This document shows, piece by piece, positions 27,241-28,612 of a DNA stretch of 40,014 nucleotides. Origin of the DNA: Octopus bimaculoides (lineage: Eukaryota); NCBI RefSeq assembly GCF_001194135.2, contig NC_068983.1, forward strand, positions 37,188,667 through 37,228,680. The letters are read 5' to 3'. The notes below the pieces were generated by a model. That model was not told where the DNA came from. It saw nothing but the letters and a program-made list of their open reading frames with translations, and ran no database searches. Numbering within the stretch: position 1 is the stretch's first letter; every line of letters begins with the position of its first letter. A program made the position numbers and the translations under genes.

Positions 27241-27261
27241 AGATGACGAGGCATTTCGCTA
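27241..27261 (-). other. 21-nt 28S rRNA fragment: the downstream flank of the R2 insertion site
   Basis: Minus strand TAGCGAAATGCCTCGTCATCT versus 28S TAGCCAAATGCCTCGTCATCT, a 20/21 match exactly at the R2 3' end. The match stops there and no other rDNA is visible in the window. Confidence 0.9.
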
Positions 27262-28612
27262 GTTATAACAGACTTTTTGTCCTTTTGCCTATTTTTATAG
27301 TAGGTGGTCCCACTTATGCCTCGTCATTAGCCACACTCGCAGGCCGGCACCAGGCACCACAGGCACCGATTGGGAGTCCATGCACCTCCACCGGCCGATC
27401 AAACTCCTGCAACACCAATTGTATGAGCAGCCGGTACTTGTGCATTTTCCCAAGAGATGTCTCTCCCAAGGCATCTCCTTGCTCCAATCGGACGGTCACA
27501 TCGATGACTACTACCTTCTCCGGACGGCTAAAGACTAAGTCTGGAATCAGCCTGGAGCTTCCTACAATGTAAGAAGGCTCCACATTGACACTCCAACCGT
27601 AGTCAACAGCTTCTTTCGCTACAAGGCTACATATTTCGTTGTGCCTGGCGAGTCGTAGTCTTTTAAGAGCACCACAGACTCCCCTCGGGACCCACGTGTC
27701 AGAGTTTCTCGGGTAGGATATACATTGGAGCGAACCTTGAGAAGACCCAAGTAACACCCTTCCGTAATCCTAGCCGGCCTATTTATCCAACTATTACCAA
27801 TTGCATCCCCACGGTACGCCGCCGCACAAGCACCATGAACCAGCTGGGCCGCCCATCTATGGCAGTGCACCAGCCAGAAGTCAGTAAGCGAAGGTTACGG
27901 CGGATGACGCATTTAGGTATTAGTCTCACCATCTGATGAAGACTTAACCCGCCATCACGCCGGCTGCAATACAGGAAGGAAGAGGAAGTCTCGGCAGATA
28001 ATATTGCTGCAGCAAGAGGAATTTCTGTCGGGGTTTCAGCGGAGCCCTGCATATCTTATTGATGTCCAGTGACACCTGCTCCACTGAATCTAAAGAAAAT
28101 TCCCGACTAGAGTTCAAATTCCACGTGGGAACATTAAGACCTAGGTAGGATATCCTCTCCTCCGGTTTTACTTCTTTTAAAGCGACACCATCGACGGATG
28201 GAGAACCACGCACACTTACCGACATTAAGTCCCAGTCCGACTGCGAGGTAGAACTCCAAGCATCTATCAATAAGAGCCTGGAGACCACCGCGCGACACAG
28301 CGACTAAGACCAAGTCGACCGCGTACGCGATTCCATCCACTCGGATCCCCTCAGCACGCAACTCCCCGCTGCCCTATAACACATCTAACAGCGGGTTGGT
28401 TGCGATGTTGAAGAGGATCGGTGAGAACGCATCCCCTTGCCTAACACCCCGGCGAATCTCAATGGGTTCACTGACTTGCCCACCGACTGAGAATCTGATA
28501 GTACTTCCTTCAGAGATCCCCTCCACGAGCGCTATAACTTGCTCGTGGAACCCAAGTCTCCGCAGTCCCGCATACACCAACGAGTGCGAGACTGTACCGA
28601 AGGCCATTCCCA
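27262..28612 (-). mobile_element. R2-clade non-LTR retrotransposon: 5'-truncated, frameshifted, with internal deletions
   Basis: AFGTVSH, RGVRQGDAFSPILFN, AYAVD (YADD), GLNVGKC, YLGL, APLKPRQK..YYLPRL, RDGGL, SWI..LLKVRSNVYPTRETLTRG, RLARHNEI, EP..PDLV..VIDVTV..KMHKY and GACGAW. Confidence 0.92.

What the first reader, a model, noticed from the sequence alone, without database searches (positions are those of the whole stretch)
27241..28612. R2 retrotransposon outside rDNA carrying 21 nt of its 28S target flank at the 3' end only
Seen: the minus-strand R2-like element ends ...GTCTGTTATAAC and is followed directly by TAGCGAAATGCCTCGTCATCT. The match then stops, and the neighbouring DNA is a Gypsy remnant. 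The truncated 5' junction (~28612) shows no upstream 28S sequence (…CTCTCTTAAGG). Established: R2 inserts at 28S ...CTTAAGG^TAGCCAAATGCCTCGTCATCT and is co-transcribed with rRNA. Inference: an R2/28S read-through RNA with a ~21-nt rRNA tail was integrated ectopically, so the copy may record the length of the native R2 RNA 3' tail in this lineage.
Basis: partly seen in the sequence, partly recalled or inferred. Interest (0 to 1): 0.72.

Follow-up and report, generated by a model that had tools for sequence, protein, structure and literature searches.

The report
Dead off-target octopus R2 copy with rRNA tail
This is a broken, 5'-truncated copy of the ribosomal-DNA-specific R2 retrotransposon sitting outside the rDNA of Octopus bimaculoides; it dragged 21 bases of 28S rRNA along at its 3' end, but two other octopus copies carry about 14 and 92 bases, so the tail length is not fixed.

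Summary
On the minus strand a decayed R2 copy (about 28613 to 27262) ends ...GTCTGTTATAAC. It is followed by TAGCGAAATGCCTCGTCATCT (27261-27241), a 20/21 match to the 28S sequence just downstream of the R2 site. No 28S similarity continues beyond it or lies upstream.

The window is Octopus bimaculoides chromosome CM046603.1, 5 kb from an intact TRIM-like gene. It is not rDNA.

The family is a true R2: it matches solved R2 proteins at E = 5e-105. The window copy is dead, with one stop, at least four frameshifts and three deletions.

Two more ectopic, 5'-truncated octopus R2 copies also carry 28S at the 3' end only. Their tails are about 92 nt (O. bimaculoides) and 14-16 nt (O. sinensis). For the O. 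sinensis copy, paralogous repeat units lack the 28S bases, so the tail came in with the element.

The best reading is off-target, target-primed reverse transcription of R2/28S co-transcripts with heterogeneous 3' ends. The same logic was published for R1 in Drosophila.

The Gypsy identity of the flanks is not confirmed. A side lead is a 3'UTR motif complementary to 28S +8 to +19.

The parts
27241..27261 (-). 28S rRNA-derived tail, TAGCGAAATGCCTCGTCATCT. It corresponds to 28S positions +1 to +21 downstream of the R2 insertion site, with one mismatch (C5 to G).
   Evidence: unique in the window, 20/21, 0 expected by chance. The match stops at +21.
27262..27329 (-). Remnant of the R2 3' UTR: the last ~68 nt, ending ...GTCTGTTATAAC. 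It lies downstream of a ~290-nt internal deletion that removed the ORF end and most of the UTR. The deletion junction is GTGTGGC|TAATGACG at 27330/27329, give or take 3 nt.
   Evidence: alignment with the L002 and L003 copies. The R2/28S junction falls in the same alignment column in all three.
27316..27327 (-). 3' UTR motif ATGACGAGGCAT. It is an exact reverse complement of tail positions +8 to +19 (27254-27243). In the RNA the two would form a 12-bp stem closing a 61-nt loop that holds the R2 3' end.
   Evidence: MFE -35 kcal/mol, z = -4.4, 0 of 200 shuffles as stable; 12/12 against antisense 28S, 11 of 1000 shuffles reach it. The homologous L003 motif matches antisense 28S +8 to +36 at 21/24 with a 5-nt gap. 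L002 lacks it.
27329..27757 (-). Remnant of the R2 C-terminal restriction-like endonuclease region (RHNEIC...IPDLV...IDVTV...KY). The CCHC part upstream is disrupted.
   Evidence: 66-78% aa identity to the octopus R2 proteins P0001 and L002. In one search this region of the L002 protein aligns to the C-terminus of solved R2 proteins.
27758..28166 (-). R2 region between RT and endonuclease (thumb/linker). It has frameshifts and two internal deletions of about 30 and 38 aa relative to L002.
   Evidence: HSPs fall in frames -3, -2 and -1. L002 residues 420-449 and 493-530 are unmatched.
28167..28613 (-). Remnant of the R2 reverse-transcriptase domain, from about motif 3 onwards: RGVRQGDAFSPILF; YADD mutated to YAVD. 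There is an in-frame TAG at 28376-28374. The 5' truncation point is about 28613.
   Evidence: RVT_1, E = 4e-5. and (74% aa to L002 residues 200-339); nucleotide homology starts at 28605.
26870..27240 (+). Flank next to the 28S tail. It may be a decayed LTR-retrotransposon pol (RT-RNase H connection) on the + strand. This identity is not statistically supported.
   Evidence: by-eye motif ILVLANYYRCVPAYAEKIGPL. Searches found no significant match.
28614..29190 (+). Flank next to the truncated R2 5' end. It may continue the same decayed pol (TDH-like and GK.N-like motifs). This identity is not statistically supported.
   Evidence: by-eye reading. Searches found no match. One search found no target-site duplication with the other flank.

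Best explanation
This is a dead-on-arrival, off-target R2 insertion made from an R2/28S co-transcript. An R2 element resident in the rDNA was transcribed as part of the pre-rRNA.

Inferred steps of the insertion:
1. The R2 protein, bound to the 3' UTR, used a 3'-OH at a non-rDNA site, either a stray nick or an existing break in old repeat DNA.
2. With no complementary primer to set the start point, reverse transcription began at the 3' end of that RNA molecule. That end lay 21 nt into the downstream 28S.
3. cDNA synthesis or joining stopped inside the RT-coding region, which gave the 5' truncation at about 28613. No upstream 28S and no target-site duplication resulted.

Shown: the copy then decayed. 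It acquired one stop, at least four frameshifts, two internal coding deletions and a ~290-nt deletion of the ORF end and 3' UTR.

It has no present function. Sister copies carry 14-16 and about 92 nt. The tail therefore reflects heterogeneous 3' ends of R2 co-transcripts, not a single processed end.
For: - Structure of the copy and its junctions.
- R2 family identity: the L002 ORF matches solved R2 proteins 9nl2, 9nl3 and 9dou at E = 5e-105 to 1e-96, and Bombyx R2 at 4e-62. The window copy is 67-88% aa identical to L002 across the five HSPs.
- Non-rDNA location: O. bimaculoides chromosome CM046603.1 next to a TRIM-like gene. No rRNA is found in the window.
- Three of three sampled ectopic copies keep a complete R2 3' end plus 92 nt or less of downstream 28S, lack upstream 28S, and are 5'-truncated at different points. 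An intact 3' end with 5' truncation is the signature of target-primed reverse transcription. Random DNA fragments of an rDNA unit would not all end within 100 nt of the R2 3' junction.
- L003: two paralogous repeat units read ...AGCAAG|TTGTTTTA... where the R2-bearing unit reads ...TAGCCAAATGCCTCAT|TTGTTGCA.... The 28S bases were therefore brought in.
- Decay argues against fresh contamination: the window tail has 1 mismatch in 21 and the L002 tail has 8 in 92.
- Literature: ectopic R1 copies carry up to 14 nt of downstream 28S, read as a 28S tail on the template RNA (PMC2718515). A-clade R2 proteins need at least 4 nt of rRNA tail on the template (PMC11371274, PMC13580325).
Against: - No empty site is available for this insertion, so continuity of the two flanks is only a by-eye reading.
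- No target-site duplication or junction microhomology was detected.
- Only three copies were sampled, and they were ascertained through annotated ORF fragments.
- An RNA intermediate is inferred from architecture, not demonstrated.
- A DNA-level capture of an R2/rDNA fragment would look similar for any single copy.
- The assembly is short-read and gapped.
Confidence: 0.68

Rival explanations
1. DNA-level relocation. A piece of an R2-inserted rDNA unit, from a broken or extrachromosomal rDNA fragment or via ectopic recombination, was captured at a double-strand break. Later deletions trimmed the 28S to 21 nt.
For: There is no target-site duplication. The copy shows several later deletions, so trimming is plausible. 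The L002 copy keeps a longer 28S piece of 92 nt. [quoted passage not shown]
Against: All three copies keep 28S only downstream, and only 92 nt or less of it. All three are truncated inside R2 at the 5' side. Random fragments should sometimes include upstream 28S or long downstream stretches. In L003 the tail abuts the repeat unit cleanly.
Confidence: 0.17
2. The 28S-like bases belong to the element. An R2 lineage that had lost strict target specificity carries a 28S-identical 3' terminus and spreads with it, as proposed for R2Hm-B, which has a 15-bp 28S-identical end.
For: Non-specific R2 families exist, and the oyster R2 has one non-28S junction out of two (PMC5035012). All three octopus copies found here are outside rDNA.
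Against: The tail length differs in every copy: 14-16, 21 and 92 nt. An element-borne terminus should be constant. A 92-nt tail cannot derive from a shorter one. No recent near-identical ectopic copies were seen; the copies are only 74-85% identical to each other.
Confidence: 0.06
3. Cryptic target. The repeat already contained a 28S-like 21-mer, by chance or from an old rDNA fragment, and the R2 endonuclease recognised it.
For: None directly. The empty site of this locus could not be examined.
Against: About 0.08 sites with 1 mismatch or fewer are expected by chance in a 2.7-Gb genome (my arithmetic). There is no 28S similarity on either side of the 21-mer or upstream of the element. In the analogous L003 case the paralogous units lack the 28S bases.
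Confidence: 0.04
4. Assembly chimera between rDNA/R2 reads and an unrelated repeat.
For: The scaffold is short-read and heavily gapped: 12 N runs in 40 kb.
Against: - The junction lies inside one contig, with 570 bp or more of flank on each side.
- The R2 part is a diverged pseudogene, not the sequence expected of an active rDNA copy.
- The tail itself carries a mismatch to 28S.
- A 21-nt overlap is shorter than typical assembly k-mers (general knowledge).
- The same architecture recurs at two other loci, one of them in another species' assembly.
Confidence: 0.03

Closest known systems
Non-28S insertions of R1 in Drosophila (Stage and Eickbush 2009, PMC2718515)
   Same: An rDNA-specific non-LTR element is found outside the 28S gene with an intact 3' junction. 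Some copies carry downstream 28S nucleotides (up to 14 nt). The authors took this as evidence that the template RNA carries a 28S 3' tail.
   Different: That work concerns R1, which has an APE-type endonuclease, two ORFs and a different 28S site, in insects. The element here is R2 in a cephalopod, and the tails are up to 92 nt.
[quoted passage not shown] 2016, PMC5035012)
   Same: Incomplete, mutated R2 copies lie outside functional rDNA, some with 28S on one side only.
   Different: Those reports do not tabulate tail lengths or argue an RNA-tail origin. Octopus copies have not been described in the papers I could search.
R2 lineages with 28S-related sequence inside the element: R2Hm-B with a 15-bp 28S-identical 3' end, and fish R2 with a 28S-like 3' UTR segment (PMC5035012)
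   Same: 28S-related sequence is associated with the R2 3' region.
   Different: In those lineages the sequence is sense-oriented and a constant part of the element. Here the tail length varies between copies. The separate 3' UTR motif is antisense to 28S +8 to +19.
A-clade R2 template requirement for an rRNA 3' tail (PRINT work, PMC11371274; review PMC13580325)
   Same: Octopus R2 protein is most similar to the solved 'R2 retrotransposon protein' entries 9nl2, 9nl3 and 9dou (R2Tg, an avian element). The avian A-clade enzymes need at least 4 nt of downstream rRNA on the template, so native templates are expected to carry a 28S tail.
   Different: That is in vitro and cell-based biochemistry at the correct target, where the tail is not copied into cDNA. 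Here the tail was copied because the primer was not complementary to it. Clade membership of the octopus R2 was not tested, because the N-terminal zinc fingers are missing from all three copies.

Membership tests
R2 clade non-LTR retrotransposon | Reverse transcriptase of R2 type | tested here: met
   Window ORF pieces hit RVT_1 at E = 4e-5. The window copy is 74% aa identical to L002 residues 200-339. The L002 ORF matches solved R2 proteins at E = 5e-105, against about 1e-9 for LINE-1 ORF2p.
R2 clade non-LTR retrotransposon | C-terminal CCHC motif plus restriction-like (PD-(D/E)XK) endonuclease | tested here: met
   L002 residues 541-753 align to the C-terminus of 9nl2 (877-1093), domain E = 2e-26. 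The window keeps RHNEIC...IPDLV...IDVTV...KY at 27757-27329, but the CCHC part is disrupted.
R2 clade non-LTR retrotransposon | 3' junction at the canonical 28S site (...AAGG^TAGCCAAATGCC) | tested here: met
   All three copies end directly before TAGC(C/G)AAATGCC, in the same alignment column.
R2 clade non-LTR retrotransposon | N-terminal zinc-finger/Myb DNA-binding domain, whose zinc-finger number defines the A-D clades | not testable with these tools
   All three copies are 5'-truncated: window at about L002 residue 200; L002 starts at about residue 317 of 9nl2.
R2 clade non-LTR retrotransposon | 5' HDV-like self-cleaving ribozyme | not testable with these tools
   The 5' end is absent from every copy held. 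Rfam found nothing in the window.
R2 clade non-LTR retrotransposon | Residence inside a 28S rRNA gene | tested here: not met
   This holds for this copy only. There is no rRNA in the window and no 28S beyond the 21-mer or upstream. The locus is on a 168-Mb chromosome scaffold next to a TRIM-like gene. The copy is an ectopic member of the family, not a canonical insertion.
Off-target TPRT insertion of an rRNA co-transcript (as described for R1) | Complete element 3' end, carried downstream 28S bases, no upstream 28S, variable 5' truncation | tested here: met
   for the window, L002 and L003.
Off-target TPRT insertion of an rRNA co-transcript (as described for R1) | Empty site lacks the 28S bases | tested here: inconclusive
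   Met for L003 through two paralogous repeat units. It is not testable for the window copy: no paralogue of its flanks is in any held sequence, and the homology search of the flanks found nothing.
Off-target TPRT insertion of an rRNA co-transcript (as described for R1) | Target-site duplication or junction microhomology | tested here: not met
   The best local match between the 5' junction and the 3' flank scores 7; 812 of 2000 shuffles reach it.
   No Pfam hit at E of 1 to 10 or better. No PDB hit at E of 10 or better. No homologue at E of 1e-3 or better. Only by-eye motifs remain.

The most novel reading that the evidence does not exclude
The octopus R2 3' UTR carries a segment antisense to the 28S sequence just downstream of the insertion site. 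It matches +8 to +19 in the window copy and +8 to +36 with a 5-nt bulge in the O. sinensis copy. In the R2/28S co-transcript this segment would pair with the rRNA tail and form a long hairpin that encloses the R2 3' end.

That hairpin could set or protect the RNA 3' end at about +20, leaving only +1 to +7 free to pair with the target primer. On this reading the 21-nt tail, which ends 2 nt past the stem, would record a structured native 3' end. The two motif-bearing copies have short tails (21 and 14-16 nt). The copy without the motif has 92 nt.
Probability: 0.12. Interest if true: 0.6.

Novelty: new member of a known kind. Interest (0 to 1): 0.3.

Why it matters
How the 3' end of R2 RNA is formed, and how much rRNA it carries, is still not settled. 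The question now has practical weight. R2-based gene insertion needs a short rRNA tail on the template, and longer tails work less well (PMC11371274, PMC13580325).

Ectopic copies that copied their tail into DNA are natural records of individual template 3' ends. This one shows that octopus R2 templates did carry 28S tails. Taken with its two sister copies, it shows that the ends were heterogeneous.

That is a modest, confirmatory contribution: the argument was already made for R1 in Drosophila. The antisense-28S motif in the 3' UTR is the only element that could turn into something new, and it rests on two related copies.

Tried and rejected
1. I first read the motif CTAATGACGAGGCAT at the deletion junction as templated 'filler' DNA copied from the tail during repair or template switching. 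I rejected this: the O. sinensis copy has the same motif at the homologous 3' UTR position with no deletion there.

2. I asked whether the window flank after the 21-mer is more 28S with an internal deletion, as a MAFFT alignment hinted. I rejected this: the score equals the shuffle mean.

3. I considered a possible target-site duplication, AG(C)TGGGA(A)T. It is not significant.

4. I read both L002 flanks by eye as one LINE interrupted by R2. This was not borne out. The paralogous LINE in the same locus does not reach the junction, and nothing downstream matches it.

5. I could not confirm Gypsy in the flanks:
- The homology search with a stitched translation gave 0 hits.
- Pfam gave no hits.
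- PDB gave no hits.
- tblastx against all held loci gave only a weak LINE match.

6. Rfam found no LSU rRNA or R2 RNA element, not even for the 92-nt L002 tail. Hits in L003 are TA-microsatellite noise.

7. Two metagenome scans for the 3' UTR hairpin or motif plus the junction gave 0 hits.

8. P0001 could not be located on a contig.

Full report
**1. The observation**

On the minus strand the window reads ...AAAAAGTCTGTTATAAC | TAGCGAAATGCCTCGTCATCT | GGAGTGGGATTGCC.... The 21-mer at 27261..27241 is the only match in 40 kb to the 28S sequence immediately 3' of the R2 insertion site. It has one mismatch, and none of 100 dinucleotide shuffles produced a match at up to 3 mismatches.

- A local alignment of the following 200 nt against about 180 nt of downstream 28S scores no better than shuffled sequence (9.0 against a mean of 9.1). 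The match therefore stops at +21.
- No upstream 28S (...ACTCTCTTAAGG) lies at the 5' junction or anywhere else in the window.
- The 28S reference was typed from general knowledge of this highly conserved region. It was not fetched from an octopus record.

**2. What and where it is**

A 677-aa intact RING/B-box/NHL ORF at 32573-34606(-) maps exactly to Octopus bimaculoides GCA_001194135.2, chromosome CM046603.1, at about 37.2 Mb. Rfam finds no rRNA in the window, so the locus is not rDNA.

The window is a gapped short-read scaffold with 12 N runs. The element and at least 570 bp of each flank lie in one contig, 26456-29190.

The element is an R2:
- Its translated pieces hit RVT_1.
- They match octopus proteins P0001, P0003 and P0004.
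- A better-preserved paralogue (L002) matches solved R2 proteins 9nl2, 9nl3 and 9dou (R2Tg) at E = 5e-105 to 1e-96 over both the RT and the C-terminal endonuclease parts. It matches Bombyx R2 at 4e-62 and LINE-1 ORF2p only at about 1e-9.

The window copy starts at about residue 200 of the L002 protein, at 28613. It carries:
- an in-frame TAG at 28376-28374;
- at least four frame changes;
- two internal coding deletions of about 30 and 38 aa;
- a ~290-nt deletion that removed the ORF end and most of the 3' UTR.

It is a dead pseudogene.

**3. Other copies**

Two further loci were fetched through P0003 and P0004.

*L002* (O. bimaculoides CM046606.1, 7 kb from an ABC-transporter gene):
- It holds an R2 truncated upstream of the RT domain.
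- It has a complete 271-nt 3' UTR.
- This is followed by TAGCCAAATGCC...GAAACCACACC, which is 92 nt of 28S with 8 mismatches.
- After that, similarity to 28S ends.
- There is no upstream 28S.

*L003* (O. sinensis VCDQ01002200.1):
- It holds an R2 truncated at about L002 residue 214.
- It ends ...ATTCACAA | TAGCCAAATGCCTC(AT) | TTGTTGCACACC..., a tail of 14-16 nt.

In the three-way alignment, the R2/28S junction falls in the same column in all copies.

The L003 3' flank is a repeat. Two paralogous units, at about L003:3992 and 11465, read ...AGCAAG|TTGTTTTA... at the equivalent point. The 28S bases are therefore not part of that target.

**4. Interpretation**

All three sampled ectopic copies share the same architecture:
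- a complete R2 3' end;
- a short downstream 28S tail;
- no upstream 28S;
- 5' truncation at a different point in each copy.

This is the signature of target-primed reverse transcription starting at or near the 3' end of an R2/28S co-transcript, at a site whose primer was not complementary to the tail. Random DNA fragments of an R2-bearing rDNA unit would not all end within 100 nt of the R2 3' junction and never include upstream 28S.

The same inference was published for ectopic R1 copies in Drosophila, which carry up to 14 nt of downstream 28S (PMC2718515). It also fits the finding that A-clade R2 enzymes need at least 4 nt of rRNA tail on the template (PMC11371274; PMC13580325).

The tails are 21, about 92 and 14-16 nt. 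Each is at most the 3' end of one template molecule.

What I could not show:
- the empty site of this particular insertion;
- an RNA intermediate directly;
- any target-site duplication.

**5. The flanks**

By eye, the + strand on both sides carries motifs typical of an LTR-retrotransposon pol:
- ILVLANYYRCVPAYAEKIGPL before the insertion;
- TDH-like and GK.N-like motifs after it.

If real, that would make R2 plus tail an insert within one old element. No search supported it: the homology search, Pfam, PDB and tblastx against the held loci all found nothing. I leave it as inconclusive.

A LINE RT N-terminal fragment lies further left, at 26711-26866. It is weakly similar to a LINE in L002 (E = 0.001).

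**6. A side lead**

About 55 nt before its 3' end, the R2 3' UTR holds ATGACGAGGCAT (27327-27316). This is an exact reverse complement of tail positions +8 to +19.

- As RNA, the two form a 12-bp stem (MFE -35 kcal/mol, z = -4.4).
- I first took this for repair filler at the deletion junction. The O. sinensis copy has the homologous motif (GTCACTAATGACGAGGTAT) without any deletion there. It matches antisense 28S +8 to +36 at 21/24 with a 5-nt gap.
- The C-to-T difference between the two copies keeps the pair as G-U.
- The L002 copy lacks the motif and has the long tail.
- The shuffle tests are only modest: 11 of 1000 and 21 of 1000 shuffles reach the observed scores. The two copies are also related, so they are not independent.
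- Two metagenome scans for the motif found nothing.
- I found no description of such a pairing in the papers searched.

The motif may be a chance or relic similarity. It may instead be a real UTR-rRNA helix that shapes the template 3' end.

**7. Rivals**

- DNA-level capture of an rDNA/R2 fragment remains possible for any single copy (about 0.17).
- An element-borne 28S terminus, as in R2Hm-B (PMC5035012), is contradicted by the variable tail length.
- A cryptic pre-existing target is unlikely. About 0.08 chance sites are expected per genome, there is no flanking 28S similarity, and the L003 paralogues lack the bases.
- An assembly chimera is unlikely. The R2 part is a diverged pseudogene, the tail itself carries a mismatch, and the architecture recurs in a second assembly.

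**8. Verdict**

It is an ectopic, decayed R2 with a co-transcribed rRNA tail, a known kind of event newly seen in a cephalopod. The "native tail length" claim does not hold.

- Interest: 0.3.
- Most novel reading not excluded: the UTR/28S hairpin, probability about 0.12.

Noticed in passing
window 27316-27327 (-) paired with 27243-27254 (-); L003 about 11104-11126: The R2 3' UTR carries a motif antisense to the 28S sequence just downstream of the insertion site. It matches 12/12 in the window copy and 21/24 with a 5-nt gap in the O. sinensis copy. The L002 copy lacks it. It would pair with the co-transcribed rRNA tail.
   Followed up: partly
window 32573-34606 (-): An intact single-exon 677-aa ORF with RING, B-box and faint NHL signatures (TRIM-like). 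It is annotated in the O. bimaculoides assembly and lies 5 kb from the R2 copy.
   Followed up: partly
window 26711-26866 (+): A LINE reverse-transcriptase N-terminal fragment (GKSLGLDDLCREFFY...WQQKK). It is weakly similar to a LINE in L002 (tblastx E = 0.001). The R2 copy sits in a patchwork of old repeats.
   Followed up: partly
window, 12 N runs (for example 25799-26455 and 29191-29348): The 40-kb window is a heavily gapped short-read scaffold. The R2 locus is one 2735-bp contig between two gaps, so wider context such as LTRs of a host element cannot be read.
   Followed up: yes
window 14466-15003 (+) and 4568-4750: Long purine-rich simple repeats translate as ER/EK/RE runs and create spurious long ORFs.
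   Followed up: no
L002 2678-2992 (+): A second, distant R2-like fragment (34% aa identity to the N-terminal part of the L002 R2 ORF) lies about 5.5 kb upstream of the main L002 copy.
   Followed up: no
L003 11197-11900 and 3630-4091: The O. sinensis R2 copy abuts a repeat with internal periodicity (unit roughly 270 bp) that has paralogous units elsewhere on the contig. These served as an empty-site proxy. The 5' flank of that copy is a different LINE RT fragment in the same orientation as R2.
   Followed up: partly
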